Source of the DNA: Perkinsus chesapeaki ATCC PRA-425
Lineage: Eukaryota > Protista > Perkinsozoa
DNA: 57,859 nucleotides
Direction of reading: 5' to 3'
Assembly (NCBI GenBank): GCA_013115145.1
Contig: JAAPAO010000174.1
Location: forward strand, 1 to 57,859
Of this stretch, positions 14,604-51,587 are shown in pieces (the stretch's first letter is position 1; every line of letters begins with the position of its first letter). A program made the translations under genes and the position numbers. A model generated the notes under the pieces. That model made no database searches and was not told where the DNA came from. It saw only the letters and a list, made by a program, of their open reading frames with translations.

Positions 14604-15550
14604 CTACCGCTCTCTCTCCCTTCCTCTGCTGCCTGGAGCCCCTCGTCCGCTTCCTAAAATATATATGGGAGACAACGCACACAAAGGAACTGGGCCCACA
14701 TATGCTGAGCGAGGGAGCAGCTGGTCCCGTCGCAGCAGGGCGATGCTCCGGAATTGCCTGGGAGCAGCTGGGGTGGTTGCTTCTGAGCTACCATCAATGG
14801 AGTCCTCTACAGCCTGAGTCAGGCATCCCAAACCCCATTACCTCTCCCGGCCGGCTCACCCGTAGACCCATAAGAGCCACCTGAGAAGCCTTATCGACCG
14901 TTGTTTGCTCCTCGGCCAGCAAACGCAGTAGACGCCGGTTCGACGACGCTCCACTTGAACTGGGAGGCCCTGACTGTCGAGAATTCACCGCAGATTCTGA
15001 GGAAGGTTGCTTGAATAACAAGCTCGGGTCGAAGTCCCTGCTGGTACCAAAGCGTCCAATCTAACACGGCCGAATCTCGGAAGTAAACCAGCCCAACTTT
15101 ATTACTTGCAACTTTTCAGCCAATGCAGGATCATTAAGCAAAGTGAGCGAACGATACTTGTCATCCAGATCTGAGATGCGGTCACTTCTCGCGGAGCTAG
15201 GCCCGCTTAGGGAATGATCAACAGCCTCCAAGGCCAGAGGAGCGAAGCAAACTGCTGACCTATGCGGAGGACCGATAAACGCTGATAGCAACCAGGAAGG
15301 AGGCATTACTCAATGGACTCCAACGGACTTAGGGACGCATCATTATTCTGAATCTCGCAAGGATGCGGGGAAGCGTACGGCACGCGAGCTGTACAAGAGA
15401 ACGTCAGCATTGATGAGGCGTACGATGATACTTGAGTAGTGCGTATGGTTCTCAGGGAGCTCCTTAGCTTCACCTATGCACACACAAGTCCCTCAGAGTC
15501 CGAGAAGCACCTTACTGGACGACCCTCGATTTACCATTTCATTCACCATT
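14604..15550 (-). CDS. hypothetical multi-exon gene
   Basis: A series of short minus-strand ORFs with plausible GT/AG ends (ISDLDDKYRSLTLLNDPALAEKLQ; RRLLRLLAEEQTTVDKASQ). No family recognised; boundaries approximate. Confidence 0.3.
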
Positions 15551-17667: not shown

Positions 17668-17775
17668 TTGGGGATGGATGGCCGATGAGAGAGTGCATGC
17701 GTGCAGGTGACATGAGCGCATGCGTGCAGACGGCTACGTCACGGCCGGTGGAGAGTCTCCGAGACTGCCACTGTG

Positions 17776-19199: not shown

Positions 19200-20378
19200 T
19201 CAGAATTCCCTGTCTGTCAATACCAACGGGGCCACCAAAGTCCAGCCATACAACACCGTAACAGTAGCGGCCGCTGCCGGGCAGAACCACGGCGGCAGCA
19301 CTCCTGTTATAGCAGGCGCCAAATAGAGACCAATTAACGTGCCGCAAAGGTGGAGGACCATCAGAGACTTCGACGTTTCGTTATCAGTTGGTTCCTGCTG
19401 TCGACGGCTGCTCGACCCTTCAGACTGATTGCCGTTCGTCAAGGATTCGCTGAGACGTCTGGCATCCTGACCGGCCATCGAGGAGTCGCCCTTTGCCTTG
19501 GTCATGGCATATATGGTCGTGAAGGCGTAGAGTATCCAACCCACTGCACCTTGGAGCCCAGCGCCGGGAGCTGACAACCAGGCCGAATAGGAGAATATAA
19601 CAGAGGAGGGTAGGAGGGCACCGTGAGGGATGTATTCAGTAAGGGAGCCCGCCAGACAGGCCACCTGTACGACAAGAACCACAGCACACCAATGGGCACG
19701 GGAGATGCCTAAGAAGAAGTTATAGCAGCCAAGAGCTAGGAGCACCACGGCGGAGAAAACGATGGCTATGAACCAAGCCCGGCTGGTGGCTTCGCTGTTG
19801 CTGTAGTCCTCGGCGTTGGCGACCCATGCCTCGTTCCAGGAGTAGGCAAGATCAATGAGCATCACTTGCTGCATTAATACGTAGATGAAGGACAATGGTA
19901 CAAGGGTGACAAATAGGAAATGGAAGATGTCGTTGGGAGTGAAGCATAGCGCAAAAGCAACAACCGGTATCATCACGAACTTGAGAACAAAATACCGGTT
20001 GTTCGCCTTCCGGGCCAGGCCGTCCCCACAAGTGCAAAGCAGGAAGATTGCCAAGTGCATTAGGGCGTACGTGAATGTGATCCTCTGCACTAGGTTCGAA
20101 TAAAAACACTCCTCAACAAGTTGGTCATCTTCCTCCGAGGTGCACTTACCTATTCCTGGCAAGTAGCCAAACCACCACTGGAGGCTCTTGTTACCACCAA
20201 ATAGTGCCCCCATTGCCAATGAAAGAACAATCGTGTAAAGGTTAAGTATAAGGTAACCGATCCTCGAGGCATCCTGCCGTAGGGTGCCCAACCCCAAGGC
20301 CTTGGCACAGCATGTCCCCGTCAGTGAACCCAAACAGGACGTGAAGAAGGAACCGACCATCGAGAAGATAGCTCCCAT
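19200..20378 (-). CDS. SERINC: SERINC / TMS serine-incorporator family membrane protein, intronless
   Basis: MGAIFS..SCLGSLTGTCC N-terminus, SRIGYL, VQRITF, N..FVLKF, FIYVLMQQVMLIDLAYSWNEAW, GALLPSSVIFSYSAWL and LYGWTLVAPLVLTDREF* follow the SERINC pattern; about 10 hydrophobic segments. Confidence 0.87.
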   Translation of the reverse strand: MGAIFSMVGSFFTSCLGSLTGTCCAKALGLGTLRQDASRIGYLILNLYTIVLSLAMGALFGGNKSLQWWFGYLPGIGKCTSEEDDQLVEECFYSNLVQRITFTYALMHLAIFLLCTCGDGLARKANNRYFVLKFVMIPVVAFALCFTPNDIFHFLFVTLVPLSFIYVLMQQVMLIDLAYSWNEAWVANAEDYSNSEATSRAWFIAIVFSAVVLLALGCYNFFLGISRAHWCAVVLVVQVACLAGSLTEYIPHGALLPSSVIFSYSAWLSAPGAGLQGAVGWILYAFTTIYAMTKAKGDSSMAGQDARRLSESLTNGNQSEGSSSRRQQEPTDNETSKSLMVLHLCGTLIGLYLAPAITGVLPPWFCPAAAATVTVLYGWTLVAPLVLTDREF

Positions 20379-20618
20379 ATCCAATTGCCACAAGTGCTGT
20401 GAATACCCTTCATAACATCAACTAACTCAACACCACCCACGGCAGGCTGCCTACAAGGCTTACAGCTACGTTCCTACTTAACAGTAACAGGAGCAATTGT
20501 ACTGTCTGAGATGACGCTTAGATGGCGGCAGCTTGTCTTAGACGTTATAAACCTATTTTACATGTAATATGAGACAGAGTGGGCGGTCAGAGGGATATAA
20601 GACCGTGACGGCCAATTT

Positions 20619-28290: not shown

Positions 28291-31200
28291 ATGTGGGACT
28301 GGAAGAAGGTCACCAGCGCTTATAACAAAGTGGCCAACTCAGACTTTGTCAATCAGTCACTGCAGTCCCTGCAAGAGGCCAAGGCTAAGGTGAGCTCCCC
28401 AGTGGGCGAGTGACCTATTCTGTCCCTCAGGTGGACACAGCCTTCGAAGAGGCGATGAAGCAGCAGAACGCTGAGATACCGCACCCGTCGAGCTCGTCCT
28501 CGTCATCGGCAGCACCACGGCGGCAGGACGATCATGTTACGGTGCCGCCAGCGTTCGATTCGGACTTCCCCGTGTTTGGGCAAGCCCATTCGCCACCGCC
28601 ACATGCGAGGCCTCCACCGCCTCCTCCTCATAGAGGAGCTGCTCTTCCTGAAGTTGCTCAGGAACGTAAGGGACATGTCGCATTTCGGGAGAATATGGTT
28701 TGTTGTAGGGAAGCCGCCGCCCCCTGTGAAGAACGAGAACGCGACCAAGGGGCTCTTTGATGATGACGAGTTTGACGTCTTCATGCTGGGTGAAGGGGAT
28801 ACCAGTCAGTGGCGACCACCGCAGCATCAGCAGCAGTCTGGCGATCATAGCGATACCAGCCTGTCCGGTCCGCCGCTGCCGTCCTCGAGCTCCGGAGGAA
28901 GCAGCCGTCATGGAGGGCTTCCACCGGCAGCGACAGGGACTGAGGAGGTTGACTTGCTTGACAATGATCTCCTGTCGGGGGATGAGAACACTGCGTCTAA
29001 CGAGCTTCCAGCTCAGACTCCGCCAAGCACGGGAAATCACCCGCCACAGCTGCTGCCTGCAGTGGCTGGCCAGGAGCCGGCGATTGCTGGGGCATCAGAG
29101 CAGACTATAGTGCGAGAGTCTTCAGAGGAGAAGTTGTTTGCCTTACACACGGGAAGGGAGGAGGAGGAGGCTTCAGAAAGCCGGGGAGCTCGGCCTGTAT
29201 GCCTAGGCACCCGACCCCAGCCAGCCTCCTCAGCTCGATCCGGAACGGGGAGAGATGAGTCTGTTGGTGGATCTGTGCGGGGTGATGCGAGCATAGTTGA
29301 AAGAGCGGAGGAGCCGGTGGTGCTCCCGCCATCTGGAGCGCTCTTGGAGCTTCAGTCGACTGTTAGTCCCACTGATAGGCTGGTTTTGGACGAACGGAGC
29401 TCTATCGTTGATGAGCAGGCCTTCGATGATCATACATGGGGGGCCCAAGCGGATCAGCCTCGTGTGCCGGCGGAAACCGGAGATGCAAACACTGCGAACA
29501 GCGGTAATGGACACACTAGGATTGTCGAAGAGGCGGAGGCCACCAGTACTGGTGCAGAGGGCAGCCAGGGGTCAGAAGACGAGGAGCTCGCTGGGGTGCA
29601 TAGGAGAGATGGTGGAGCGTTGTCATCAGAGCAGAAGGATATAGATGCGATGGCTCCGCCGCAGCCGTCTCCAGAGATGCAAGCGTCATCGGGAGGGTGG
29701 AGCCTCTCGGAAGGACTGTCTGAGGTGGATAGGCTCAGTAGGGCATCCCGTGAGGGTGATGCCGAGTCTCACGAAGAGGGCACATCAAGTACTCAAATCG
29801 AGGCAGCGATGGTGCCACTGGTCGAGATGAGCACCGAAGAACCGGCCCTAGCTCATTTGGGAGCCGAGGAAGGCTACAGTGTTGAGGTAGCGACCAATGT
29901 TAAGGAATCTGCCACTGGCTCGGACCTAGATGAGGCTCTCTCGAAGGGGGACTCGAGGAGTAACCGAGCATCGCCGGCAGAGGCGGAAGAGAAAGGTCTG
30001 GCAACTTCCTTCTCCCATGAGACGACTTGGGCAGTGAGCACTTGCCCACAGGAGGAGGGGGACTTGGCTCGGGATGACCACACAGATGAACTTGCCGTTA
30101 TGAGAAGTGAGAGCATTGTTCGGTACGAGGAAGAGGTTTCGCCGGCCTATGGGGTTGCAGCGGGGCTACGGAGGTGCCTGGATGTTGTGGAGCAGCCTAT
30201 TGGAAGGATTGAGAAGGAAGACAGATCAAAGGACATGCTTACTCTTCCGAATATGAGTATCAAGGAGGAATCCGCGACTACAGGAGTGGTCCGAGCTACT
30301 GAGGAGAGCCCCGCTACAGAGGTCACCCCAGCTACTGAGGAGAGTATCGAGAAGAGGCCTGCTTCTGAGGAAATCACTGAGGAGAAGCCTGCTACTGAGG
30401 AGAGCCGCGCTACAGAAGAGAAGCTTGCTACTGAGGAGAGGCCAGACATTGAAGAGAGCCACGCTACAGAAGAGAAGCCTGCTACTGAGGAGAGACCTGC
30501 TACTGAGGAGAGGCCAGATATTGAAGAGAGCCACGCTACAGAAGAGAAGCCTGCTACTGAGGAGAGGCCAGATATTGAAGAGAAGCCTGCTACTGAGGAG
30601 AGGCCAGATATTGAAGAGAAGCCTGCTACAGGAGTGGCCCCAGGAGTCGCTGCCGACAATGCTACAGTCCAGGCCGAGGAAGTGTCGCGGCCTTTCGACG
30701 ATGATGATGATGATGATGATGATGAGGGTAACTTGGACGCCTCTACAGATAACGAGTCTGTTGTGAAAGAGACTTGGACAGACCTTCAGGGAGGCGCTAA
30801 TGCAGTGGTGCTCGAGGCCGCGGCTGGCATATCAGCGAACTATATAAGAGCCCGCCCTCCAAGCAAGAGTGATAATACCTTCCAAATAGAAAGCGAGGAA
30901 GAGGAGAAGGTCGACCACACTGAAGACGATACCGAGCAGGGCCAGCCAGAGCAGGTCGCGAGGGGCTCTGCCGAGGCAGGCGAATTGGCAATCACCCGGA
31001 CCGACACTGCTACCTCCCAAGACAATGTTAACATCACCGATAACACTGCGTCATCGACCAGCTCCACTGGCCAGGACGAGACAAGTCTAGGCAGCGATGG
31101 TCTTGGTACGGTTGCACGGGGCCTCATGAGCGTCGAGGATCTCATCGACACTGCGAGGGAGAGAGCGAGCTCGGCATTCAGTATTGGGAAGGCAGAAGGC

Positions 31201-33665
31201 GACTCTGAGGAGGAGGAGGGGAAAGCCCTTCAGGGAGACAGGATGCCAAAGGGCAACGACGGTGGGGAACCGAGGCATATAGTGCTCGGGGAGGAGGAGT
31301 GTCCAAGAGCAGAGGCGATTCATGAGGGCGATGAGCTGTCTAAGGGCAAACTTGAAGTGAACGACGAGCTGGAGACGATAGAGCCAGAGGAGGTTCAAGG
31401 TGACAGCAATCAAGCCGTAATAAGGACACTGCGAGGTGAGGTAGAGGACCTGAAGTCGAGGTTGCATAGCAGAGAGGAGCAGTTGGAGGCACACGCTAAG
31501 TACGGGTAACAGTGAACTGGCTGTCAAGTGATTGGTATTGTTTAGGACTATGCAAATGCTCCTCGATGAAGGCAACAAATCTGGGGTGAGCTCTTCGGCG
31601 ATGGTGTCATTAGCTGATGGGGCTCTTCAGGTGAATGAGGAAGTGCTGAGAGACCTAGAAAGTAAATACTGTGCTTCGACAGAGGAGCTCCGTAGGTCAG
31701 GTGACATAAAGTAAATGCACTCTGCTGTGTTAGATGAGGCTAAGGCAGTTGCCGCTACAAGAGAGAAGCAGATAACAAAGCTGCGGGAGGAGCTTGACAA
31801 GCAAAGCAAGGAGGCCGAGGATGCCAAGGAGGAGACGCAACGTAGGTTGGTGTTGAGGCAGTTAATCGACGATGGCAGGGCAGGTATCTTGGAGGAAGGC
31901 AAGAAGCTCGCTCAGAAGCTAAGCAACCTTGAGCAAAAGCACAAGTCGAGGCTGCAGCAGCTCGATACGGCAAAAAAGGAGAAGGAAAAGCTTCAAGCGC
32001 AGCTTGAGGAGGCGCAACAGAAGTAGCCTCGTCGTTCAGGGAGGTTCCCTACCGCTCTCTCAACAGGTCTAAAAATCTTGGTGATGCCTCGGCGGAATCA
32101 GCTGCGTTGAGGGAGCAAATGCAGAAGGACAGGCAGAAGATGAAAACACATCTTGCTGGAGTGGTGGCTGAGAGGACCAAAGCCGAGGTGAGCTCGACAG
32201 TTGCCACGACCTCCTCAATGGCTGTATAGGATGACTTGGTGAAGACGAAGGAAAAAGTGAATCAGTATGAGCGGGAAAAGGAAGAGTTACTGAGCAGCCA
32301 GAAAATGATGCAGGCAGAGCTGGACCGGGTCGGTTGACTTGGCATTCTGCCCTCTGAGAGCCTTATGTATTTTAGGTTAGTTCGGAGCTATCTTCCGCAC
32401 AAAATGAACTTATATCATCACAGCGGCAACATACCGAGCAAATAGATAAACTGCAGACGGAGTTAGAAGAGACTCAGCATGCCCTTGCCCAACGTGAGTA
32501 AGATCTAGGCGTGGAGAAAGAATCGGTATGGAACTTAGAGGAGTCAGCTGGAGGATCCTATCCATCGGTAGCAGCGGCGGAGCAACGAGCTGTCGATGCT
32601 GAAAGCAAGTGTGACTCCCTGCACATGGAACTCGCGAATGCTCGGAAGGAGGTGGGGCCCTCGACCCAGTTGCCCTTCTCAAACTTGCCCTCAGTTGGCC
32701 GAGGTCCGTGGGAAGCTTGAATCTTCGACGAGCAGCACTAAGCAGTTGAAGAAGGACATTTCGGCGCTCAATGCCCAGCTTGAAACCATGAGAGGGGACC
32801 AGGCTGCAAAGGCCACCAATGAGGCACATCTCTCTAGCGCCTTGGAAGAAGTAGGTTTGCATTTACCTGGGCAGCGTACGTACAGCTCATGCCTCCCGCA
32901 GGTGAGTCGGCTACAGGATCAGCTGCGACAGAAAGATTCGCGCATGTCGGAGGTTGTGGAAAAGCTCAAGTAAAGCACTAGAGGACTTGTGCCGGTTGAC
33001 GATGCCGGTCTTGTCTCACAGGAACTCCGACGCTGAAAAACGCGCAAACGCAGAGCAATTGCGGGCAATGCAGGTGCGTGCGGATGATCTGCAGCAACAA
33101 CTCGAGTCGGCTCAGAACGCTTTGAACGACGCGCAGTCCACTGGTAACGTCCATTTCGTAGCGACTTTGCCGATATTCCTTCTCTAGGTCGTCGAAATAG
33201 CGGCCAGGCTCTATTGGAGGCAAGTTCACCAGAACCCTCTTTCGCACGAGGCAAGGATCTCGTTATGAGCTGCTCGCAGATCGTCGGTCGATGTGTTTCA
33301 GGTGCAGCGTCATCCTCATCGGTTAGTCCTAGTGGAGAGTCTCAGCTAGAGAAACGGTGTAGAGAGGTAAGTGCCTTCTAATTTGTATTTGGACCCATTC
33401 TTGAACGGTAATGTCATCTTAATTGCTTAATAGGGACATTGTTATTATTATTTTTACGTATCCCACCGTCCAGTGGGCAAAGCTTCGACGAATAGTCTTC
33501 GGGTGCATACCGCACTCACACCTGTTTCTGATTCAGTTGGAGAGGAAGTTTGAGATCTCCCTCCAAGCCCTAGGTCAGCTGCAAGAGGAACTGGACCAGT
33601 CCAAGGACGTGGCCGCCATGTACAAGTCGATGTTGAAGAAGCAAGTGGAAGAAGAGACTTCCTAG
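28291..33665 (+). CDS. TMF1/Sgm1-like golgin: aromatic N-terminus, long acidic disordered region, coiled coil, TMF-type C-terminus
   Basis: Start MWDWKKVTSAYNKVANSDFVNQSLQSLQEAKAK|VDTAFEEAM. An exon of about 2.8 kb is acidic and low-complexity, followed by many short coiled-coil exons. The end LERKFEISLQALGQLQEELDQSKDVAAMYKSMLKKQV resembles the TMF C-terminal domain. Confidence 0.68.
30379..30630 (+). repeat. coding minisatellite, 14 x 18 bp (EEKPAT / EERPDI / EESHAT hexapeptides)
   Basis: 14 consecutive in-phase hexapeptides beginning with EE, read directly from the sequence. Confidence 0.95.
30697..30723 (+). repeat. GAC(GAT)8 microsatellite encoding poly-Asp (D9)
   Basis: Direct reading of the sequence. 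Confidence 0.95.
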
Positions 33666-33915: not shown

Positions 33916-36900
33916 TTAGTAAGTGATCTGTGATAGTTGGTCATACTCTTTCCGCCATATATTTGTCTGAAGATTCGATAACCTATAATCACTTTGGCCA
34001 TCATTGTCGACTCACTTGGCCTTCCCAGCAGCTCCCTTGTACATGTGGCACACTGTTTTCACGTAGTCGTCGTAAAACGTCCCTATGAGTGTGTCGATTC
34101 CGCTACGACTTTGAAAACGTTACCATGAGGAAGCCTCTCCGCTGCGAGGGCTTTCCTGCTCGTTGTCGAGTCCCGGACTCCAAGCCAGTCCTCGTGGCTC
34201 AATGTGCGGCTGCGTGCTGAGGATCTGGACGAGCGAGGCGTATAGTATCGGTCATGCTTCAGAAGACCGCAGTCGATCAACGGGAACCTAGTCGAACAAT
34301 CTTGAGCTGGCATTCGATCCCCCTCCCACTTGTAGGCATTTTCAATTGCCCTTCCGCCGTCCCCTAATGCGTGATACTTGTGGGGCCAGTAACCTCTGGA
34401 ACATGTCTGTCACAGAAGGCAGTTTGAAGAGTATCGAGGTTAAGTGGCATACCTCTCTCCAGAGCATATCCCGACGGACTGGTGTAGCAGTATCAGACGG
34501 CCAGAAGTTAGCTATGCCCACTCTGGCCATGACAGAACGAGATCAGACGATGACAAGCACAGCAGCACTGTGCAGCAAGGTACTTCTTATTTACAATACA
34601 ACACTAGCTACACTTAAAAGACATCTCATTATTATTAATAACACCTTGCAGCATGCTACACAGCAGCTCATCGATACGTCAACGAGCCGTGCCTGCCGAT
34701 GGGCTTGGGGACGGGGAACAGCCTCGGTGTGATCCCCAGCACCGCCCGCAGCGCGCCGAACTGCTGCCTTCTCACCGGGAACCACAACACGGGCCTCTGT
34801 CTCATAGGCAACAATCTCCTCGTAGGCGTAACCACAACTCCCTCGCTTCTTAAGATCCCCTCCCTCTTTTCGAGCTCCTCCTCCGTCAGCCATGATCGAG
34901 ATTTCGGTATAATCGGCTCTGTCCTAGTGCTGACACCCCAAGCATGCTTCGCCCACTCCACAAACACTTCACTGGGTAGCTCAATCAGAACGCCTTCTCG
35001 TGCGTTCGGGCTCGTGTACAGCTTAGCGAGGACGCGATTGTTCCTCTCTGGCTCCTCACCAACCTCCACGAGAGGCTCCTCGTCTAGCATCACCGGTATC
35101 TCCCGGGGCAGTTCATCCTCAACTAGGGACTTCATCAGATTCACTGGTATGATATCACTGCTATCCTCTTCACCATCGTTCACCGCACGCCACCTTATAT
35201 TCTGTCCCAGAGTGTCATACTTCAGCCAATCGCTGGTCCCGTGTGCCGAGCTCTGGCTCGAGACTGCCTCTCGCAAGGATAGGGATTCTATCAGATCACT
35301 GGCAGACTGCGCAAACCGATCACGGAACCCCTGATCTATAGTATGCCCCCCATAGTAGTGCCGTGGGCTGTTCCGGCTGCTGCTGCTGTGGTGGTTGTGG
35401 CTGACCTTTCTCCCTCTTCCCTTGTGAATTCCCAGTCCCCTTTTGGCCGCCGCTCGTGCAGCCACCGTTCCTCGAGGCCTTGCGCTCCGCCCTGCCCCAC
35501 TGACAACTATCGGAAGTGGCTCAGCACAATCAACGACGTCGTTAATAGCTCTTGTATCATCCACACAATCGAAGCTGTCCCCACTAGAGCAGCTGCTGCT
35601 GTCTGTCAGCCTGATGCGCTCCGCGGCATGGTGTCCCCAAATCTCCCTAATAACCGCGTCCGGCGCCGAGACCACCTCGAGACCCCACACCTCGGTATCA
35701 GCATTTCTATCCTCGCCTTCTAATGTGTCCCTATACGCAAGTTCCTGCTCTGGTGTCTGTGTCCCAGTATGACTGCACCCATACAGTCCGTTGGTATCAG
35801 TCGAGGCCCCAACCCCTACCATCACCGACCCACCACTGGCCATCTCTCGACAGCGAGGCGGCGGTGGCGTTTGCGTCACAGAGCATCGTGTGTCCCTAAT
35901 GGGTGGATCCACACCTTTGTTGGCTCGCACTACAGCTGGTGTCTGCGATGCCCCAGACCTCCTCACCTGCCTGTCCTCGTGCTGACACCCGGTATCCGCG
36001 AGTGTCGCTGGAGAACCACCGAGCTTCACCGTACGGTATTCAAGCACAGGGGTTTGTGTGCCGCTCTCCCGGCCCGCCATCAGCCCCCTAGTATCCGTTG
36101 CCCCGTGTTTCCTCGTTAAGCTCGAAGTATTGCAAGACGTGCTCCTGTACTGACTGGTAGGCGTCTGTGTCACCGCAGCGCTACACTCGATCCTGGTAGC
36201 CGCGTCAACGGCGGTGCTCCTATGTTTCGTGATGGGTGTTTGGGTCTCAGCGTTCCTTGAATGCTTCCCTTGGCCAGCAGCCTGACATCCCACACTGCTC
36301 GCTACCCTTGGTATATCCTCCCCGACTAGGCTCGACTTCCTGATGACCAGCCTAGTTCCGATGGCCACGGAATGTCCGCTGGGAACCACGCTTTCGTTTC
36401 CGACTCCCGAATCCTTCCTTGCGATGCCTCCAGTCTGACAGGACCCATCCACAGAGCTCACGGAAGATCGCCGCCTGTCGAGTTCAGCAACATCAGCACA
36501 CAGCCCGGAGCATCCACACATAGGGCACCCGCTGGTCTCCTCGAGAGACATGCCAAACATATCAGTTCCGGATCGCAGGACACCCTTAGGCCTCTCCGGT
36601 CCAGTAGGCTCGGCCTTCCTCTTCCCATCACCCACAGAATCGGTGCGTGGGCTCCAGCCGCGAGGAGTCGACCGCTCACACAAGGAGCGGTGGGTCCCTC
36701 CTCCCCTGGATGGCGACTCGGCCACTGTACTGGCTACGTGGCTGTCCTGGGGTCCAAAGTGGTCCGATGCCGGCCACCACTCGCTACAATCATCAACAGC
36801 TTTGTCGGTCTGCACCTGCTGGCAGTATGACCGAGACAAGTCTCTAGTGTGACCGGTTGGGATGGTTATAGATATTTTCCGTTTGCCCTTTCCTTCTAAG

Positions 36901-37496
36901 TGAGGTAAACATCTAGACGACGTCACATCAACGCCCGGGGACTTCCACGCAGCCACGAGGGTGTCACAGACGACAGCCTGGTTCCGGTATCTGGACAAGA
37001 GAGCATCATCCTGCAAGTGTCTGATGCCAGACTTAAGGTAGACTTACTCCTTTTGAAGTGCTAAAATGCTCAACAACATCTCGGTAGTCTCCGTGTCTCT
37101 CCCTTGATTCTGCCGTCGGAACTTTTCGATAGCTGCTTTCTGTTTGCGTTCAAGTTTGTCGATTCTTTTATACATCAAGGACCTCTCTCGAGATAGCAGG
37201 GCTATCGTTGCCGCATGGTGAGGTTCCAAGTCCACCACGGTAGGGCAGCTCATGTATTGGTAAACGCTTACGGAAGCTACAGTAGTCTGTAAGGAATGCG
37301 AGCCGTCAGTGGAGGGCGAAGTGCGCAATGATCCGGTCGTTCTCAACTCATTAGACTTGTCGTCGAAAAGAAAGACGGACATCTTGCGCACTTGAGATTC
37401 CTCAGTGCGCGTGCTGGTGCTGTGCGGCAAACACAACAATCCTTTGACTGTAGCTAGGGCGTCAGACTCTGTATACAGTGGGGCAAATACGCCCAT
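33916..37496 (-). CDS. large mostly disordered protein with N-terminal coiled coil and a TQT-motif array
   Basis: Exon 37496-37047 (ending ..LALQKE|) splices to the 782-aa ORF 34668-37016. 3' exons down to about 33916 are tentative. No family recognised. Confidence 0.55.
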
Positions 37497-37998: not shown

Positions 37999-39216
37999 AT
38001 GATATGCTGTGGGAAGACTACCCTCTATATTCTGGGGCTCCTGATCTTCGGGTCTCTCAATACTATGTGCACTAAGTTGCAGTTTGAGATGACTTCTGTT
38101 GGTATTAACGGAGATGTTAAGCACTTCATGAAGCCCTGGTTCGGAACATTGACCATGTTTATGGGTATGTGTATAGTCCTTTTCATCCACTTCATCGACG
38201 TGTTTATCGACCGTCAGAAGGCGAAGAGGCGTTATGGTGAAGGTTATCAAGCACTTTTGCAACAGAACAAGGCTGAGAGCAAGGAACCAGGCTTTTGGAA
38301 GGCTGGTGCTTTGATCTTGCTCCCTGCTTGTTTCGATCTGATTGCCACCACTATGTCTTTTGTGGGATTGTTATATAACTCTGCATCTGTGTGGCAGATG
38401 CTCAGAGGTTCTATGATCATCTTTTCCGCCATATTCTCTGTGTGCTTCCTTAAAAGGAAACTTTATGGCTACAATTGGTTTGGTGTCTTCATGTGTGTTG
38501 TTGCCATCTGTTTGGTGGGTGTCGCTAACATTATGTCCGGCTCCTCCGCTACGTCACATACTAGTACTGGTCTGATGGTATTCGGAATGGTTATGATCGT
38601 GGCTTCCCAAGTCATCCAATCTCTTCAGATTGTAACTGAAGAGAAGCTCTTGAAGGGCTACACCATCGCTCCTTTCCACATTGTTGGCATGGAAGGTGTT
38701 TGGGGAACTCTTATCCTTGTACTTCTTGTTTTCCCCTTGCTCTACGTGATCCCCGGTAAAGATGAAGGGTCAGTTGAAAATACTCTTGATACCATGGTTA
38801 TGATTGAGAATAACAAGAACCTTCAGATCATGATTGGTGTCTATATCGTTTCGGTTTTCACCTACAATATGGCCGGAATGTTGGTTACCTATGCTTTGTC
38901 CGCTGTTCATCGGACTATGTTGGAGGCCACCAGAACCGCTGTTATCTGGGTCTGTGATCTCGTTATCCAGTATTTCATTGCACCCGGATCCAACTTTGGT
39001 GAAGTGTGGACTGCTTGGTCATGGCTTCAGCTCTTTGGTTTCCTTCTTCTAGTATTGGGTCAGGCAATTTACTCTGACCTTGTCAAGGTTCCTGGCTTTT
39101 ACTATCCCCCCAAGCCTCAAGCTGTTCAGATGATGAAGTCACCTGCTAGCGTGAGGTGTAACGTCCCGGAGGTTGCCGAGGCTGTCCCCAATGCCGCCGG
39201 CGGCCAAAGTAGTTAA
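37999..39216 (+). CDS. SLC35F6: SLC35F6-like DMT-superfamily transporter, intronless, 405 aa
   Basis: FGSLNTMCTKLQ, HFMKPWFGTLTMFMGM, LPACFDLIAT, ASVWQMLRGSMIIFSAIFS, QIVTEEKLL, VGMEGVWG, SAVHRTMLEATRTAVIW and WSWLQLFGF match the SLC35F6 pattern; about 10 TM segments. Confidence 0.85.
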   Translation: MICCGKTTLYILGLLIFGSLNTMCTKLQFEMTSVGINGDVKHFMKPWFGTLTMFMGMCIVLFIHFIDVFIDRQKAKRRYGEGYQALLQQNKAESKEPGFWKAGALILLPACFDLIATTMSFVGLLYNSASVWQMLRGSMIIFSAIFSVCFLKRKLYGYNWFGVFMCVVAICLVGVANIMSGSSATSHTSTGLMVFGMVMIVASQVIQSLQIVTEEKLLKGYTIAPFHIVGMEGVWGTLILVLLVFPLLYVIPGKDEGSVENTLDTMVMIENNKNLQIMIGVYIVSVFTYNMAGMLVTYALSAVHRTMLEATRTAVIWVCDLVIQYFIAPGSNFGEVWTAWSWLQLFGFLLLVLGQAIYSDLVKVPGFYYPPKPQAVQMMKSPASVRCNVPEVAEAVPNAAGGQSS

Positions 39217-44500: not shown

Positions 44501-47500
44501 TTGCCCAGCCTCCTGAAGTATATGATGAGTCATCACCGAACCAAACCCATTCGTGTGCCCATGTATAAATTGCATAAACACCTAGTTTTTCTATTAGCGA
44601 TTCAGGGACGCAAAGATTAGTCCTAACTTAGGACTCCTGAGTAGTCGCTCAGGGCGACAGGGCCACTGCAGTTAGGAATCAATGTACGATCATGAAGTGC
44701 ACCAGAACACAACAACAGATCTGATGGTGGAACACATTATAGCAGGTGATATTCCTATGTACTGCCGGTTCGGAGCGAGTATGCGCCTTCCTGGACTCGG
44801 CAAAAGTGCCCGTCCGCCACGAAAACGGCAACCGCACTGGTCATGTCGCGTGACCTCTCCACGGGTTGTAGCGGTGTATCATGCTAGCATGGATTGCGCC
44901 TAGTTATTGCTCTCCCACGGGCTCCTGTAGCTATGACGGTACTCATGTTGTAGCCTCAATTAGTTAGTTATTTTCTTGAGCCAAGATGGCTTACTTGTGT
45001 TGCGAGGCTCGTGGCGCGAGAAATATTGTAGCGCAGTGAAAATGCGTTAGGGCGCTACCGTAGCGTCGCTACGGAAACCGTAGCACAGAAAGTTCGAAAA
45101 GACTGGCCCCGACGAGCGGGCAACATGTGTCGTTATACGGCTCGTATAACGTGAAGCACTTATAATCTCAGATACAATATCTACTCAATGGGCAGTACAG
45201 CATTACTAATACTCATCTATCCGTACAGGATATAATACTAACATCCTGTGCGGCCCGCTGTACGGGCAGAAAGTCTGTGATTATCACAGACATGTCGCTG
45301 TGACATTGTCGCATGCTCCCTGATAGAGAGCCAGGCAAGAGCAGTGCACCGCCGACTATAAATGGACCCATGGATACGGACTTGAGGCTAGAACAAGAGG
45401 GGAGCCGGGTGTGACGATTCCGATGCGCCAAGTCGTACGAACTGCCTCTGCGTTAAGCAATCCTGACTGAGCATCCAGCAACGACGGAAGGTCAAGAGAA
45501 CAGTAAAGGCGAGCCGTATCAAAGTGAGCCAGCACGGTTCTTTGGAATCCCAGGCATTATGCCTGAGGCATACATGGGCCCTGTAACATGAACATTTAAT
45601 CGACAACGCCATGTAACATGGCCACAAAGGCCTCGGAGGGCAAAGGAAACCCTTAGATAGGACATTTACTCTGAGCAACACTAGTTCATCAATCAGCTGG
45701 ATCTACCTTATAATGATTTCGATACAAGTTGTATCATACAACACTATCAGTGATGACTGGAAGTCCCCGTGCACATGCTGCGTGATATTCTACCGTAAAG
45801 CACGTGCATTGATCATACCAGCGGAATCAAGCCCTTGCTCACCTCCTCTCTTTGTCGCAATGTAGTCGTCAGCTCATCAAGCTTTGAAGACAGAGAGTTA
45901 GCCTTGCCCTCCATGTCGGTAGTATTTTGCGCTTTGAGCTCCAATTCCCTCAGCTTCTCCTCATATTGAGTTACCTGTGCATGATGGTGAGCGACGAGAA
46001 GAAAGGGGACAGGGTCGTCCTCGAGAGTGGGAGTGCAGACCGACCTAGACCTGTGCTACTACCTCTTGAGTTCTCGTACGCGCCAGCTCATCATATGAAG
46101 CTTCCGTATTCTTCTGAGACTCTTCCGCTTCTCTCACCTTCGCGGCCTTCGCACGTAAGAAATAATCGTTCGACAGCAGAACCGTCAACTCACCAGTTCA
46201 TCTCTCTCTTTCCGGAGAGCTTCGACATCCACAGTCAATCGTTGCAACTCGTCGGCATCTCCCTTCGCACGATTAGATTCACTCCTGAACGAAGAGCCAC
46301 CTAGCACCTCGCATGTCAGCAGCTTGGACTCTCACTTTAAACGTTGGAGCTCTCCATCCCGTACAAGCAAGTCATTTTCAAGCTGCGAAGTGCGAGCCGT
46401 GCATTTCTCAATCTCCCCTTTCGATCTCTAAGATGAACTAACTGCCACGTCTTCGGCGATTAGAATGTGTCCGTCAGTGTGGGCCTACCTCCTCAACCTC
46501 CTCAAGAGCCTTCTTAAGCTTAGCAACTTCCGTACTGCCACTACCACCGTTAGAATCCGCTTTGGCTCTAAAGTCATCTAGCTCTGCTTTGAGAACTTCC
46601 AAAGCTTCCTCTTTATTTCTGACCTGGAGACGACTACCCTAGAAGCGTGATGGTAGCAGTCATCTCACAGTCGCCATAAGCTCATCGTTCCGGGCGTTGG
46701 CATGCGCTAACTCGTCTTTAACGATATCCACTGCAATCTCCTTCTCGGCCTCGGCATCCCGCAATCTTTGCTCAAGAAGAAAAACTTTCTCGCCGATCGG
46801 CGTGGAATCCTGTGGGAAACTGCGACCAGCTTACCAGTGTTGGAAACCTACTGGCGTGGCCGAAGGTACAGTGGACTTGTTGATCGACAATTCTGGCGAC
46901 GACGCTACCAGCACCGGCGCTACAATGCAGATAGTTTGCAATTGGATCACAGTAAACAACGCCGAAACCTCGACATTCCACCCCCTTTAATGGCTGCTTA
47001 CTCTCGAGGTCATTGGTACTCATACTTGTATTATACAAGTCCAACAAAGATTCGCTGTCTTGTACAGTTTCACCGGGGTCTGGAGGGGTTGCCGTAGTAG
47101 TGCCCTAAATACCAGTGGTATTATACGTGCACACTGGAGAGGGCAATTGACATCCCAACCCGACATCGAAGCGGTCTACCTGGCCGCTGCTAGGCTGGGT
47201 GGTGATGTCATTTTCGCCAATAAGATCTCCCATATCCAGGAGGTTAACACACTTGAATGTCCCCGTGCTCTGAAGGACGGTAAAGTCCGGCAACAAGTTG
47301 ATCCAACCTAAGTATATTGCCTACACTTTGTGGTCTCAGCGCCGGCTCGGATTGCTGTCGCGCTCTGAGAGCTTCTCCCGAGAAAAACTTGAAATCGTCC
47401 TCGTCCTCATCTTCATCATCCAAGTCGAATGTTTTGGCCGATTGAGAATGGCCTGAAATCCAACAGACATTCCGATTCATCGACTCTGGTGAATATTTTG

Positions 47501-48411: not shown

Positions 48412-49869
48412 TTATAACAACCCAACAACGTCTTCAGAATACGAATCAGAAAATTCAGCAAAAGCATCGAATGGTGAGCTACTTACGGACCCTCGCTGCC
48501 TACTAAGAGTAAACCTCTCTTCATAGTGTGGCCGAGCTCTTGTGAAAGATGCTACAGCCTGCATTAGGACAGGCACCACACAGTCACTCCACCTTTGCCG
48601 ATCGCTCTCGCTAAATTCCGACGCCCACAGTTGCGCAATGGATCCATATGGCATGTCCTCAAGCAGGCGACACAGAACGGAGAATGGAGCCCTGTCCCCG
48701 TGTAGCCCAATACTCTCTAGGATCTCCGACCGAGCCTTACTAGGCCGAGTGATATCCACAACCACAACCTGACAGCGATACAGCAGACAGTCTGCCCGAC
48801 CCCTAGCAACTGGTTTAACCAGCCATAATCGGCCAGGCTCTTCCATTGTATGTTTGACTGCCCAACTGAGAGCATCTGGCGGCTTCACTGAGGACAATAC
48901 CAAACACTTAAACTTGTCCTTCACCAGCCTGTAGATGTCTTCAACGTGCTGTGATGTCCAAATGTTAGGATCGGTCTTGTCTCGGATATAGACAAACGTT
49001 TCAAGCCCCTTCAATGCCCTCAGTAATGTCAGGCATGCATCTCGTCCAATACGGCCATGAAGCACCAGAGTAGTGAGCCGTGCCATAATAGGGAAGGTTG
49101 TGACCCGTATGTCGGGATCGCATCTCAAAGTAAATGACCGAAGTCGATATCGGTTTCTTTTCGCCAGTACACCTAGTGCCTTAAGGGTCGTGTCTGCATG
49201 AGATGACCGGAGCGAACGTTTGGGAGGTACGTGACTATGCTTAGGGCAACACACAAACTCGAGCCTGGTGAGGCCAGAGAAGATATAGGACACTTCAAGA
49301 GCAAGGTCCGCCGAGCCTGCCCGCCTAGGATTGAACTTCAAAGTGAGCTCCTCGATAAGTGTTAATCGCTTGAGCCCATCGATGAGTAGCTCGGCGTCCG
49401 AGGTTCGATCAACGTAGTAGTCCAAGTGGATTCTCAATCGACGAACGGTAGTTGGGTCCACGCGAAACAGAGCACTCTGGCTCCAATATGACAAACCGAC
49501 ATTAACGTTGGGAGTTTTGACTCTCCCATTGATAGTTAGCGCTCCGAAGAGATCTCTCGAGCAAAGTGCTATAGCAATAACGTCCTGTTGTGATAGGCAA
49601 TCGCTCACTCTGGTCAGAACACCTGCGGCTTGCAAGCTCATCGATGAAAATAAATCGATTAGATCGGCGAGCGCGAAATGAATGCGTTCGTGCGCAAGTT
49701 GTTTATCCTTTTTCTGTCGTCGTCGTCGCATTGAAGGCTGCCCTTCTATGGAGTCACCTCCAGAGCTGAACCTTATTATATTTGAATCGATCAGCTTGCC
49801 GCGGTCTGTACTAGAGGATGATGCCATCGACGACTTTATCCCTGAGCCCAATATCATGCTGGACGACAT
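48412..49869 (-). CDS. F-box-like / leucine-rich-repeat-like protein, intronless (start uncertain: 49869, 49731 or downstream)
   Basis: AAGVLTRVSDCLSQQDVIAIALCSRDLF resembles an F-box. LxxLxL-type segments follow (LKRLTLIEELTLKF, FSGLTRLEF, RLTTLVLHG, LKGLETFVY). Confidence 0.55.
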   Translation of the reverse strand: MSSSMILGSGIKSSMASSSSTDRGKLIDSNIIRFSSGGDSIEGQPSMRRRRQKKDKQLAHERIHFALADLIDLFSSMSLQAAGVLTRVSDCLSQQDVIAIALCSRDLFGALTINGRVKTPNVNVGLSYWSQSALFRVDPTTVRRLRIHLDYYVDRTSDAELLIDGLKRLTLIEELTLKFNPRRAGSADLALEVSYIFSGLTRLEFVCCPKHSHVPPKRSLRSSHADTTLKALGVLAKRNRYRLRSFTLRCDPDIRVTTFPIMARLTTLVLHGRIGRDACLTLLRALKGLETFVYIRDKTDPNIWTSQHVEDIYRLVKDKFKCLVLSSVKPPDALSWAVKHTMEEPGRLWLVKPVARGRADCLLYRCQVVVVDITRPSKARSEILESIGLHGDRAPFSVLCRLLEDMPYGSIAQLWASEFSESDRQRWSDCVVPVLMQAVASFTRARPHYEERFTLSRQRGSVSSSPFDAFAEFSDSYSEDVVGLL

Positions 49870-50443
49870 GGGGTCGTCGAACTACGTACAAGACGCATTT
49901 AGTTTTCGCGGAACAGCAGCAGCAGCAGACCCTCTCTTCGAGGCCTGGGACTGGACACCTTCAACTGTGTCTAGTTCTTCTTCCTCCTCACAACCTCTGC
50001 TAGATTTCTCGCCTGAGCCAAACTCAATGCCAACTCTACTGCTGAATGAACCGCAGGAGCTGTGCAGCTCCATAATAGATAATGGGACATTGTGGGAACC
50101 ATGCAAAGAAGTCAGTTCCTCACGAAGCCCTCAAAGATCTCGCAAAAGTCGGCATCGGGGTAATGTGCCCCAACTGGGCGAAGCTGGAAGGGCTCAGCTC
50201 AAGTCGGCGATTTCCGCGTCCATCCGAGGCAACACTCGCAGGAAAGCCATATGTCGTGAAATTGGTGTGCTAAAAAGCGCAACTATACGAGAACTTATCC
50301 AAATGGCAAACGCTATTGGATTGGGATATGTGGTCGATGAACTCGTTACAGATTTTGAGCGTTTGAAGGAGCAGAAGAGGATCCTCCGACCGTTAAAACA
50401 AGCTACTCGAAAGCGAGTTACCAAACGCAACCAAGATGTTTGA
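49748..50443 (+). CDS. hypothetical protein: acidic N-terminal region plus one copy of an unassigned 59-aa basic helical domain
   Basis: Intact intronless ORF (alternative ATG at 49682). The domain at 50171-50347 aligns without gaps to two domains in the next gene. Confidence 0.75.
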   Translation: MESPPELNLIIFESISLPRSVLEDDAIDDFIPEPNIMLDDMGSSNYVQDAFSFRGTAAAADPLFEAWDWTPSTVSSSSSSSQPLLDFSPEPNSMPTLLLNEPQELCSSIIDNGTLWEPCKEVSSSRSPQRSRKSRHRGNVPQLGEAGRAQLKSAISASIRGNTRRKAICREIGVLKSATIRELIQMANAIGLGYVVDELVTDFERLKEQKRILRPLKQATRKRVTKRNQDV

Positions 50444-50627
50444 CAATCTATCGTTTTGACTTTGAAGGACATGTGTTAACTTACCTCGCTGAAATCTTAC
50501 CATCATGATGTCCATCTTTACCATGCTAATTCATGTTTATCAGCTAATCATTTAATAAGACCTTGTGTTACTCCCGCCGGAATGTCTATATTCTACATTC
50601 AAGGCGATATAGTTATTATACGAGCAA

Positions 50628-51587
50628 ATGTCATCATCACCATCACATCCCAGCGTCAGTCATCACGGGACAAGTAAAACTGAAAGTTCGCCTAGAGCCG
50701 CTGCTGCTGGTGGTGGTGGCGCCACAAAACCCTCGAATGCAGTTATTGCTGCAGCTACGGAATTACTATCTTCATCATCAGCGTTCGATTCCGTTACCAC
50801 CTCGGGCGGTTCCGCAGCGATGAAGGGCCTCAATAGCTGGCCAGAGGCTATAGAGCCACCGATAGGGTACGAACATATATCATCATCCAAGGAAGATGAT
50901 GATAGAAGTGAAGCAGGGTCGAACAAGAGAAAAAAGATACGTCTTGGCAACGACGGGCGAGCTAAGCTCCGAAGAAAGATATCATCGATTATAAGAGAGT
51001 CTAGAGATGTGAGAAAAGCTCGACAGGAAGTTGGTTTAATCAGATCTGCTACAGTGGGACAATTGGTAGGCATGGCTGATAGGTTGGGACTGAGTGACTA
51101 TGTTGATGAAGTGATAGAAGAGCAAGAACAGTTTAGACTCAACAAACCTAAGGCCTCGAAGAGACCTAGATCGACTCCGCAATGGTATGACCATTCCACC
51201 GGTTCGATGTCGAGTAGCGGCTTCTCCACAAGTGTCGGTAGCTCTCTTAGCTCTGTGGGAGTGACAAGCAGCATTGGTTCAAGCACGACGGGGAGTGGCG
51301 CGGGGCATTTACCATCTACGCGTACTGGCCAACAGCTCCAGTTGGGCAACAAAGGCAGGAGCCTGTTGCGACAAAGGATATCGGCTCTCACACGAGGGAA
51401 TGCCGAGCTCAAGAAAGTGTGCCGCGAAATATCAGTGATCCGATCAGCAACGGTGCAGCAGTTGATAGCCATGGCAGATGCAGTTGGCTTGAATGATTAT
51501 GTAGATCTGTTAGCTGATGATTACAACACTAGTAAAAAAGCAGCGAACCGGAACAGCGTCGAACGGCAAGCAAGTGATGCCGCGTGA
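50628..51587 (+). CDS. hypothetical protein with two copies of the same 59-aa domain separated by a Ser-rich linker
   Basis: Intact 319-aa ORF with domains at 50940-51116 and 51339-51515. NLS-like KRKKIR and KASKRPR flank the first copy. Confidence 0.8.
   Translation: MSSSPSHPSVSHHGTSKTESSPRAAAAGGGGATKPSNAVIAAATELLSSSSAFDSVTTSGGSAAMKGLNSWPEAIEPPIGYEHISSSKEDDDRSEAGSNKRKKIRLGNDGRAKLRRKISSIIRESRDVRKARQEVGLIRSATVGQLVGMADRLGLSDYVDEVIEEQEQFRLNKPKASKRPRSTPQWYDHSTGSMSSSGFSTSVGSSLSSVGVTSSIGSSTTGSGAGHLPSTRTGQQLQLGNKGRSLLRQRISALTRGNAELKKVCREISVIRSATVQQLIAMADAVGLNDYVDLLADDYNTSKKAANRNSVERQASDAA

What the first reader, a model, noticed from the sequence alone, without database searches (positions are those of the whole stretch)
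49748..51587. Unassigned 59-aa domain in three gapless copies across two tandem genes: candidate lineage-specific DNA-binding family
Seen: QLGEAGRAQLKSAISASIRGNTRRKAICREIGVLKSATIRELIQMANAIGLGYVVDELV; RLGNDGRAKLRRKISSIIRESRDVRKARQEVGLIRSATVGQLVGMADRLGLSDYVDEVI; QLGNKGRSLLRQRISALTRGNAELKKVCREISVIRSATVQQLIAMADAVGLNDYVDLLA. Invariant pattern: LGxxGRxxL...IS...R...E.....SAT...L..MA...GL...VD. All else in the proteins is low-complexity: an acidic and aromatic N-terminus in gene 1 (activation-domain-like), Ser-rich linkers and basic NLS-like patches. The SAT..EL..MA..IGL half recalls helix-extension-helix (SAP/LEM/Rho-N) nucleic-acid binders. I recognise no Pfam family. Inference: a transcription-factor-like or chromatin-binding family in a lineage with few known TFs.
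Basis: partly seen in the sequence, partly recalled or inferred. Interest (0 to 1): 0.75.

Follow-up and report, generated by a model that had tools for sequence, protein, structure and literature searches.

The report
Unnamed conserved four-helix domain, alveolate parasites
Two neighbouring genes of a Perkinsus shellfish parasite carry three copies of a small, positively charged four-helix protein domain that no database names, yet it is conserved from Perkinsus to Cryptosporidium and Babesia; the proteins are built like nuclear regulators, but DNA binding is unproven.

Summary
Two tandem + strand genes (49748-50443 and 50628-51587) carry three gapless copies of a 59-aa domain, 39-53% identical. 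The domain is under strong purifying selection while the rest of each protein drifts.

It has no Pfam family, no sequence relative in the PDB and no clear fold neighbour. AlphaFold gives a confident four-helix domain (pLDDT 82, and 85-94 in a second model), and everything else in gene 1 is predicted disordered.

The domain is not confined to one lineage. A profile search finds 66 protein clusters. The named ones are Perkinsus marinus and P. olseni, Chromera, Vitrella, gregarines, Cryptosporidium, Babesia and Theileria. All are hypothetical proteins; some are labelled "AT hook" yet have no RGRP core.

This genome holds at least 14 domain copies, and the window's genes belong to a Perkinsus-specific branch. 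P. olseni keeps the same tandem cluster, including an unannotated two-domain orthologue.

The family-wide features fit a nuclear regulator or chromatin factor: mean net charge of +4, an enriched NLS-like basic flank, and an acidic-aromatic disordered N-terminus with conserved short motifs. Nothing here shows DNA binding. The SAP, Rho_N, ACDC and AT-hook membership tests all fail or are inconclusive.

The parts
49748..50443 (+). Gene 1 coding sequence (231 aa; database model P0005). The ORF opens at 49682, but the conserved start is Met at 49748.
   Evidence: The N-terminus MESPPEL is shared by orthologues from P. olseni, P. marinus and another Perkinsus.
49748..50107 (+). Gene 1 acidic, aromatic, disordered N-terminal region (aa 1-120). 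Net charge -18, 17.5% D+E, 8.3% F/W/Y.
   Evidence: Composition. AlphaFold pLDDT is below 50 over most of residues 7-137.
49925..49966 (+). Conserved short linear motif in the disordered region (aa 60-73, ADPLFEAWDWTPST). Other conserved islands lie at aa 83-92 and 105-119.
   Evidence: 71% of columns are invariant across 5 orthologues, against 0-11% in the flanking stretches.
50171..50347 (+). Domain copy 1 (59-aa core). The predicted fold spans aa 141-218, about 50168-50401, and includes a long fourth helix. A basic tail follows.
   Evidence: AlphaFold gives pLDDT 85-94 and helices 145-159, 163-172, 180-190 and 193-218. Against orthologues pN is 0.11-0.12 while pS is saturated.
50444..50627 (.). 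184-bp spacer between the two genes.
   Evidence: The same head-to-tail order with a short spacer is seen in P. olseni.
50628..51587 (+). Gene 2 coding sequence (319 aa; P0001), carrying two domain copies.
   Evidence: A two-domain orthologue sits at the syntenic place in P. olseni (L043:9810-10802).
50919..50939 (+). Basic NLS-like patch (NKRKKIR) directly upstream of domain copy 2.
   Evidence: Across the family such patches occur in 18 of 71 upstream 30-aa flanks, against 10 of 358 control windows.
50940..51116 (+). Domain copy 2 (first copy in gene 2).
   Evidence: The AlphaFold model built on it has pLDDT 82, pTM 0.66 and four helices. It is 68% identical to its P. olseni counterpart.
51117..51338 (+). 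Ser/Thr-rich linker between the two domains of gene 2 (36.5% S+T). It holds a second basic patch, KRPR.
   Evidence: It is poorly conserved against P. olseni.
51339..51515 (+). Domain copy 3 (second copy in gene 2).
   Evidence: It is 59% identical to its P. olseni counterpart but 49% to the other copy in the same protein, so the internal duplication predates the species split.

Best explanation
These are two members of an unnamed protein family of myzozoan alveolates.

Shown. Each protein is mostly intrinsically disordered and carries one or two copies of a compact, basic four-helix domain of about 60-75 aa. The signature is L-G-x-x-G-R-x-x-L-K-x-x-I-S ... I-G-K-h-K-x-A-S/T-h-x-Q-L-h-x-M-A-x-x-x-G-L. 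The domain is the selected part of the protein. The family is old, reaching from Perkinsus to piroplasms. It has expanded by tandem duplication in Perkinsus.

Inferred mechanism. The proteins act in the nucleus as regulatory or chromatin-associated factors. NLS-like basic clusters beside the domain import the protein. The basic domain presents conserved positive positions (R7, K11, R/K19, R/K25, K33, K/R35) and tethers the protein to a polyanionic target, most likely DNA or chromatin. The fast-evolving acidic-aromatic N-terminus, with its few frozen short motifs, recruits partner proteins. Gene 2, with two domains on a flexible Ser-rich linker, would bind two sites or bind bivalently.
For: Real and constrained. 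The copies are found at E 1e-7 to 1e-13 in the genome. dN/dS is 0.026 between the P. olseni and P. marinus gene 1 domains. Between the window and those species pN is 0.11-0.25 with synonymous sites saturated. Within gene 1, 80% of columns are invariant in the domain against 0-20% in most of the remainder.

Fold. Two independent AlphaFold models give the same four helices at pLDDT 82 and 85-94, with the rest of gene 1 below 50.

Breadth. 66 clusters reach E<=1e-3. Named members come from Perkinsus, Chromera, Vitrella, Gregarina, Digyalum, Cryptosporidium, Babesia and Theileria. The domain is 80-98% identical among piroplasms.

Expansion and synteny. This genome has at least 14 domain copies, partly in tandem arrays. 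The gene cluster is conserved in P. olseni and P. marinus.

Nuclear or polyanion-binding reading. Mean domain net charge is +4.1 (range 0 to +8) over 61 unique domains, with six conserved basic positions against one conserved acidic position. NLS-like patches are enriched about 9-fold in the 30 aa upstream (18/71 against 10/358). Gene 1 is bipolar: -18 at the N-terminus, then +5, +4 and +7. There is no obvious signal peptide, transmembrane or enzymatic feature by eye, and no Pfam domain in 10 long members.

Weak leads only. Pfam Rho_N reaches E 0.023-0.034. XRE-type HTH regulators appear in both fold searches at Z 4.0-4.6. The Atlas structural neighbours are mostly HTH-type families at TM 0.41-0.56.
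Against: No member has any experimental localisation, binding or phenotype data that I could find. No fold match rises above the background expected for small helical bundles: the best Z values are 6.1 and 5.6, and Foldseek finds nothing at E<0.7. The top fold matches differ between the two models, so the HTH, SAP and ACDC resemblances are not reproducible evidence. The family is never fused to a known DNA-binding or chromatin domain. Basic patches could be part of another kind of binding surface and not an NLS. The enrichment statistic counts related sequences, so it is not a true probability. Plasmodium and Toxoplasma homologues were not identified, which is odd for a core nuclear factor, although the profile used was built from Perkinsus copies only.
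Confidence: 0.4

Rival explanations
1. The domain is a protein-protein docking module and not a nucleic-acid binder. It would be comparable to, or distantly related to, the ACDC four-helix domain of ApiAP2 factors, which binds the bromodomain protein BDP1. The family would then be adaptors or cofactors that join other regulators.
For: ACDC is a four-helix bundle restricted to the same broad lineage, has no other PDB neighbours, and is reported to bind BDP1 (abstract of 10.1101/2025.11.26.690747). Generic peptide-binding three-helix bundles (paramyxovirus P X-domain, MLLE) recur in both Foldseek lists. The disordered regions carry conserved short motifs typical of interaction hubs.
Against: The ACDC match does not recur with the second model. 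It covers only three helices and lies within the noise range. Pfam ACDC (PF14733) matches none of 38 members even at E<=10 and nothing of this family in the genome. The domain is 60-75 aa against 91 for ACDC. The models show no kinked third helix. No member carries an AP2 domain. The conserved surface is basic, which fits a polyanion better.
Confidence: 0.3
2. The family has a non-nuclear role. It could be a cytoplasmic RNA- or ribosome-associated factor, or a basic domain that binds acidic lipids or cytoskeletal polymers. The basic flanks would then be part of the binding surface and not an NLS.
For: There is no localisation data. The basic charge and basic flanks fit RNA or acidic membranes as well as DNA. 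A 60S pre-ribosome chain appears in both Foldseek lists. No chromatin domain is ever fused to the family.
Against: Those ribosomal matches have TM 0.12-0.22 and E>1. The bipolar layout of acidic IDR plus basic domain, and K-R-K-K / K-R-P-R type patches, are more typical of nuclear proteins.
Confidence: 0.2
3. The domain is a true but highly divergent member of the SAP/LEM/Rho_N helix-extension-helix class. It would bind DNA non-specifically, as SAP domains do.
For: The stretch h-x-Q-L-h-x-M-A-x-x-x-G-L has the same spacing as the first SAP/Rho_N helix and turn, as read against this genome's own SAP domains. Rho_N gives weak hits in 2 members. The PIAS1 SAP four-helix domain scores Z 4.3 over 57 of 65 residues.
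Against: The SAP model finds 7 true SAP domains in this genome but none of these copies. The second half of the motif (extended loop, G.K..L..RL) is missing, and the fourth helix starts 1-2 residues after G-L. The SAP match is rank 36 in one search and absent from the other.
Confidence: 0.1

Closest known systems
SAP / Rho_N helix-extension-helix DNA/RNA-binding motifs (Pfam PF02037, PF07498)
   Same: Small basic helical module. The third helix and the G-L turn share the spacing of hydrophobic residues (L, +3/+4, G at +8) with the first SAP/Rho_N helix. There are weak Rho_N hits at E 0.02-0.03.
   Different: No match reaches threshold. The extended loop and the conserved second helix are absent. 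The domain has two extra N-terminal helices and an invariant L-G-x-x-G-R cap that SAP lacks. It is not a leading fold neighbour.
ACDC domain of ApiAP2 transcription factors (Pfam PF14733; PDB 8rwu)
   Same: Four-helix domain confined to the same alveolate lineage and usually near a protein terminus, with no close solved relatives. One model matches at Z 5.3.
   Different: There is no sequence-profile match. The domain is shorter (60-75 aa against 91). No kinked third helix is predicted. It is never found with an AP2 domain. The match is not reproduced with the second model.
XRE / lambda-repressor-like helix-turn-helix domains
   Same: Compact 4-5 helix basic domain of similar size. Members appear in both fold searches: 2a6c, 2o38, 3eus and 3f51 at Z 4.0-4.6. 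Atlas neighbours lean towards HTH families.
   Different: The scores lie within background for helical bundles. No Pfam HTH family is hit. The helix before the G-L turn is about one turn longer than in a classical HTH.
AT-hook proteins (the database label on Babesia ovis/ovata/caballi and Cryptosporidium felis members)
   Same: The label implies DNA binding, and the proteins are basic near the domain.
   Different: None of the members so labelled contains an R-G-R-P or G-R-P core. The label probably reflects a weak hit to the G-R of the domain's N-terminal cap; that is my inference.

Membership tests
SAP (PF02037) | Match to the family profile at or above its curated threshold | tested here: not met
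   No SAP hit for any of 38 members at E<=10. A six-frame scan of the genome finds 7 SAP domains, none at the family's loci.
SAP (PF02037) | Two helices separated by an extended loop with a conserved G, and a second helix of the pattern G.K..L..RL | tested here: not met
   The first helix and G-L turn fit. The next helix starts 1-2 residues after G-L and carries W-D/E-x-A-x-x-L instead.
SAP (PF02037) | Fold similarity to a solved SAP domain | tested here: inconclusive
   PIAS1 1v66 scores Z 4.3, rmsd 2.7 over 57 residues at rank 36. It is absent from the second search.
Rho_N (PF07498) | Match to the family profile at threshold | tested here: not met
   Best E is 0.023-0.034, in 2 of 38 members only.
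ACDC (PF14733) | Match to the family profile | tested here: not met
   No hit in 38 members at E<=10. The genome scan gives one unrelated sub-threshold hit.
ACDC (PF14733) | Four-helix bundle with a kink in helix 3 (the signature stated in 10.1101/2024.02.09.579679) | tested here: inconclusive
   Both models show four unbroken helices. 8rwu_B scores Z 5.3 over three helices in one search only. I could not inspect the coordinates.
ACDC (PF14733) | Co-occurrence with AP2 DNA-binding domains | tested here: not met
   No Pfam domain at all in the window's proteins or in 9 of 10 long members; the tenth has only a sub-threshold bZIP_Maf hit.
AT-hook | R-G-R-P (G-R-P) core flanked by basic residues | tested here: not met
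   A regex scan of the fetched proteins P0001-P0094 finds G-R-P only in Vitrella (P0047, P0075) and B. bovis (P0078), in a non-basic context. None of the 'AT hook'-labelled proteins has it.
XRE-type HTH | Fold or profile match clearly above background | tested here: inconclusive
   Z is 4.0-4.6 in both searches, within the stated noise for helical bundles. No Pfam HTH family is hit.

The most novel reading that the evidence does not exclude
The domain is a previously unrecognised DNA-binding fold that defines a second transcription-factor family, beside ApiAP2, conserved across Myzozoa. It would have one highly conserved gene in Cryptosporidium and piroplasms and a tandemly expanded set in Perkinsus. 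Members might read some of the orphan conserved DNA words that other agents of this scan noted in Perkinsus introns and spacers.
Probability: 0.2. Interest if true: 0.8.

Novelty: new variant of a known kind. Interest (0 to 1): 0.5.

Why it matters
Apicomplexans and their relatives have very few recognised transcription-factor families beyond ApiAP2, and how they control genes is a long-standing gap. This work gives a precise domain definition with a signature, boundaries and a confident predicted fold. It links uncharacterised 'hypothetical' or mislabelled 'AT hook' proteins in the animal and human parasites Babesia, Theileria and Cryptosporidium to an expanded family in Perkinsus, which can be cultured. 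If the domain binds DNA or chromatin, it opens a new regulator class in these parasites. If it is a docking module, it marks a new set of adaptors. Both outcomes can be tested with a 60-75 aa recombinant domain and one tagged gene. As it stands it is a well-defined domain of unknown function. That is useful, but it is not yet a mechanism.

Tried and rejected
1. Word-index homologue search with gene 2 found only itself. The exhaustive profile search was needed to see the family.

2. Pfam was run on the window proteins, on the 7 and 38 domain sets and on 10 long members. Nothing reached threshold.

3. PDB sequence-profile searches gave only chance hits: Spt7 at E 0.6 and a designed PPR at E 2.5.

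4. Foldseek and VIA-align were run on two independent models. No match rose above background, and the leading hits (Nup170 C-terminal domain, death-fold domains, phage phi6 P8, ACDC) differ between the models.

5. ESM Atlas gave no usable feature hit, and the structural rows have TM of 0.56 or less.

6. I tested whether ARP1, a domain-less nuclear partner of AP2-P in Babesia gibsoni (PMC13720069), could be the piroplasm member. Its length (661 aa) and gene identifier differ from the B. gibsoni hit (537 aa, BgAZ_401400), and I have no sequence to compare, so I dropped it as unsupported.

7. I tried to name the organisms behind the large environmental subfamilies through a neighbouring ATP synthase beta gene. 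It is too conserved. The best named hit is Vitrella at 82%, which is not decisive. A short-alignment tree places one such group next to the apicomplexan Digyalum, but with low resolution.

8. One gene joined by an intron, instead of two genes, is rejected. The gene 1 C-terminal tail and stop are conserved in orthologues, and P. marinus has gene 1 without gene 2 next to it.

9. The bacterial promoter/terminator scan does not apply to a eukaryote and was ignored.

They were searched exon by exon, and for the spliced forms I relied on database models returned by the search (P0022, P0033, P0035).
Full report
**Observation**

The window holds two head-to-tail ORFs on the + strand, 49682-50443 (253 aa) and 50628-51587 (319 aa). 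They align without gaps at 39-53% identity with 19 invariant columns.

In a six-frame search of the whole 41.7-Mb assembly, the first gene 2 copy finds the second at E 5.7e-13 and the gene 1 copy at E 5.8e-7. It also finds four further copies on other contigs. The repeat is real.

Orthologues from other species start with the same conserved residues there, and the database model P0005 (231 aa) begins there.

**Organism**

- The genome is eukaryotic: 3,544 contigs, 41.7 Mb.
- At 44946-44991 I read the reverse complement of a spliced-leader-like word, AGCCATCTTGGCTCAAG. From my own knowledge this is the perkinsid/dinoflagellate type.
- The closest relatives of gene 1 are hypothetical proteins of Perkinsus marinus and P. 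olseni.
- Synonymous sites between the window and those two species are saturated (pS 0.8-0.9). It is therefore a Perkinsus lineage well separated from both.
- Other agents of this scan call the genome P. chesapeaki. I did not test the species name.

**The domain is the selected part**

- Between P. olseni and P. marinus the gene 1 domain has dN/dS 0.026. Between the window and those species pN is 0.11-0.25 while pS is saturated.
- Across five gene 1 orthologues, 80% of columns are invariant in residues 140-205. The figure is 0-20% in most of the remainder. The exceptions are short islands at aa 1-20, 60-73 (ADPLFEAWDWTPST, 71% invariant), 83-92 and 105-119.
- Gene 2 and its P. olseni orthologue are 40% identical overall, and nearly all of that identity is in the two domains.
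- Each gene 2 domain is closer to its P. olseni counterpart (68% and 59%) than to its neighbour in the same protein (49%). The internal duplication is therefore older than the species split.

**Structure**

AlphaFold2 on gene 2's first domain with 38 homologues gives a 76-residue model with pLDDT 82 and pTM 0.66. It has four helices at model positions 11-27, 31-42, 46-55 and 59-75.

An independent run on full-length gene 1 with only five orthologues gives the same four helices at pLDDT 85-94 (residues 145-159, 163-172, 180-190, 193-218). It predicts residues 1-140 as disordered.

The invariant L-G-x-x-G-R sits in an extended N-terminal cap that leads into helix 1. The A-S/T sits at the start of helix 3. 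The G-L forms the turn before helix 4.

**No known family**

- Pfam gives nothing at threshold for the proteins, the 7 or 38 domain sets, or 10 long homologues.
- The best weak signal is Rho_N at E 0.023-0.034 in two members.
- PDB sequence-profile searches give only chance hits.
- Foldseek against the PDB finds nothing better than E 0.7 for either model.
- VIA-align against 48,161 chains gives best Z 6.1 (Nup170 C-terminal domain) and 5.6 (phage phi6 nucleocapsid chain 5muu_D). The tool's own note puts the noise level for helical bundles higher than that.
- Three matches deserved a second look:
  - The ACDC domain of P. vivax AP2-I scored Z 5.3 with rmsd 2.4 over 55 residues in the first search. 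It was absent from the second.
  - The PIAS1 SAP domain scored Z 4.3 in the first search only.
  - XRE-type HTH regulators scored Z 4.0-4.6 in both searches.
- Atlas structural neighbours lean towards HTH-type families, but at TM 0.41-0.56.
- None of this establishes a fold assignment.

**Membership tests**

- SAP. The Pfam SAP model finds seven genuine SAP domains in this genome and none of the family's copies. Read against those domains, the family shares the spacing of the first SAP helix and the G-L turn. It lacks the extended loop and the G.K..L..RL second helix.
- ACDC. The ACDC model matches no member. The domain is shorter than ACDC. Its models show no kinked third helix, which is the published ACDC signature. 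No member carries an AP2 domain.
- AT hook. The 'AT hook motif-containing' label on several Babesia and Cryptosporidium members is not backed by any R-G-R-P core.

**Distribution**

A profile of the seven strongest copies, scored against 1.84 billion cluster representatives, finds 66 proteins at E<=1e-3. Thirty clusters were looked up, and those that carry an organism name are all myzozoan:

- Perkinsus marinus and P. olseni
- Chromera velia and Vitrella brassicaformis
- Gregarina spp. and Digyalum oweni
- Cryptosporidium felis and C. serpentis
- Babesia duncani and B. ovis

A follow-up search with the B. ovis domain adds B. bovis (BBOV_IV004870), B. bigemina, B. ovata, B. caballi, B. gibsoni and Theileria equi and T. 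orientalis. The domain is 80-98% identical among them and sits at the extreme C-terminus.

The remaining clusters come from metagenomes. Two sit on very gene-dense eukaryotic contigs, and I could not name those organisms.

I did not recognise Plasmodium, Toxoplasma, dinoflagellate or ciliate members. The profile was built from Perkinsus copies only, and 36 clusters were not looked up. Absence is therefore not shown.

**Family-wide features (61 unique domains)**

- G3, R7, A37 and L42 are invariant.
- L2, G6, L10, K/R11, S15, I/V31, K/R35, Q41, M45, A46 and G50 are nearly invariant.
- Mean net charge is +4.1 (range 0 to +8).
- Six positions are conserved as basic and one as acidic.
- In most members the domain lies within 40 residues of the C-terminus.
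- A strict NLS-like basic patch occurs in the 30 residues upstream of 18 of 71 domains, against 10 of 358 control windows further upstream. The sequences are related, so this is an enrichment and not a probability.

Gene 1 is bipolar. Residues 1-120 have net charge -18, with 17.5% D+E and 8.3% aromatic residues. A +5 patch, the +4 domain and a +7 tail follow.

**Expansion in Perkinsus**

A broader profile finds at least 14 domain copies in this genome:

- three in the window
- two in tandem on contig C331
- one each on C80, C81, C897 and C1175
- one on C3282, split by an intron
- four or five in a tandem array on C3148, which share an intron inside the domain

In P. olseni the syntenic locus carries a gene 1 orthologue, an unannotated two-domain gene 2 orthologue and a third gene of the C331 type, all head to tail. 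P. marinus has gene 1 followed directly by the C331-type gene, with no gene 2.

A short-alignment tree places the window's genes in a Perkinsus-only clade. Other Perkinsus paralogues, such as C3282 with P. marinus EER14136, group with the gregarine and environmental types. The tree has low resolution, and I read no support values.

**Interpretation**

Shown:
- This is a real, ancient, constrained four-helix domain.
- It is absent from Pfam and has no solved relative.
- It is carried by otherwise disordered proteins and has been tandemly expanded in Perkinsus.

Inferred, at about 0.4: these are nuclear regulatory or chromatin-associated proteins. The basic flanks act as import signals. The basic domain tethers the protein to DNA or chromatin. 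The acidic-aromatic disordered region, with its frozen short motifs, recruits partners. Gene 2 would bind bivalently.

Rivals:
- A protein-docking module, possibly ACDC-like (0.3).
- A non-nuclear polyanion binder (0.2).
- Within the main reading, literal membership of the SAP/Rho_N class (0.1).

I found no paper on any member.

**Limits**

- I could not run a second exhaustive iteration with a broad profile.
- I could not run HHsearch against Pfam or PDB70.
- I could not inspect model coordinates.
Intron-split paralogues were searched exon by exon, and the spliced forms quoted are database models.
- Nothing in the window looked human or viral.

**Verdict**

It is a well-defined new domain family of unknown function, of moderate interest now and high interest if DNA binding is demonstrated.

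Noticed in passing
L043:9810-10802 (+) = P. olseni GCA_013115125.1, JABANN010000007.1: An intact two-domain orthologue of the window's gene 2 lies between two annotated genes, but the list of called genes for this record does not include it. It looks like a missed gene in the P. olseni annotation.
   Followed up: partly
window 44946-44991: The reverse complement of a spliced-leader-like word (AGCCATCTTGGCTCAAG) sits in non-coding sequence.
   Followed up: partly
window 48412-49869 (-): A 485-aa ORF with no Pfam match runs divergently from gene 1. Its first codons overlap the open frame upstream of gene 1's conserved start. The two genes may share a very short or overlapping 5' region.
   Followed up: no
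G000:C3148:18191-23819 (-), loci L013, L015, L017, L032-L042: A tandem array of four or five more divergent copies of the same domain. Each is split by an intron at the same place inside the domain. The copy on C3282 has its intron about six codons earlier, and the window's copies have none.
   Followed up: partly
G000:C331:19685-24120, C80:9500-9676, C81:4725-4901 (L003-L006): The C331-type paralogues share a second conserved N-terminal block (…EGV.I……LP……GFLPLR.L…). It is also present in the P. marinus and P. olseni genes next to gene 1 and may be a second small module. C80 and C81 look like near-duplicates or haplotigs.
   Followed up: no
Database proteins P0056, P0081, P0083, P0058 (Babesia ovis, B. 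ovata, B. caballi, Cryptosporidium felis): These are labelled 'AT hook motif-containing' but have no R-G-R-P or G-R-P core. The label is probably an artefact of the domain's G-R cap.
   Followed up: partly
P0055, P0056, P0078-P0087 (piroplasm members): In Babesia and Theileria, about 25 residues upstream of the domain are also conserved (…IDF..MS...WQ.LR..G.F). The piroplasm version of the domain may therefore carry an extra N-terminal helix.
   Followed up: no
window 13027-14682 (-), 19200-20393 (-), 37999-39216 (+), 16798-17721 (-): Ordinary neighbours by Pfam: S28 serine carboxypeptidase, Serinc, a nucleotide-sugar-transporter-like protein and a KH-domain protein. The large ORFs at 28534-31509 and 34668-37016 have no Pfam match.
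   Followed up: no
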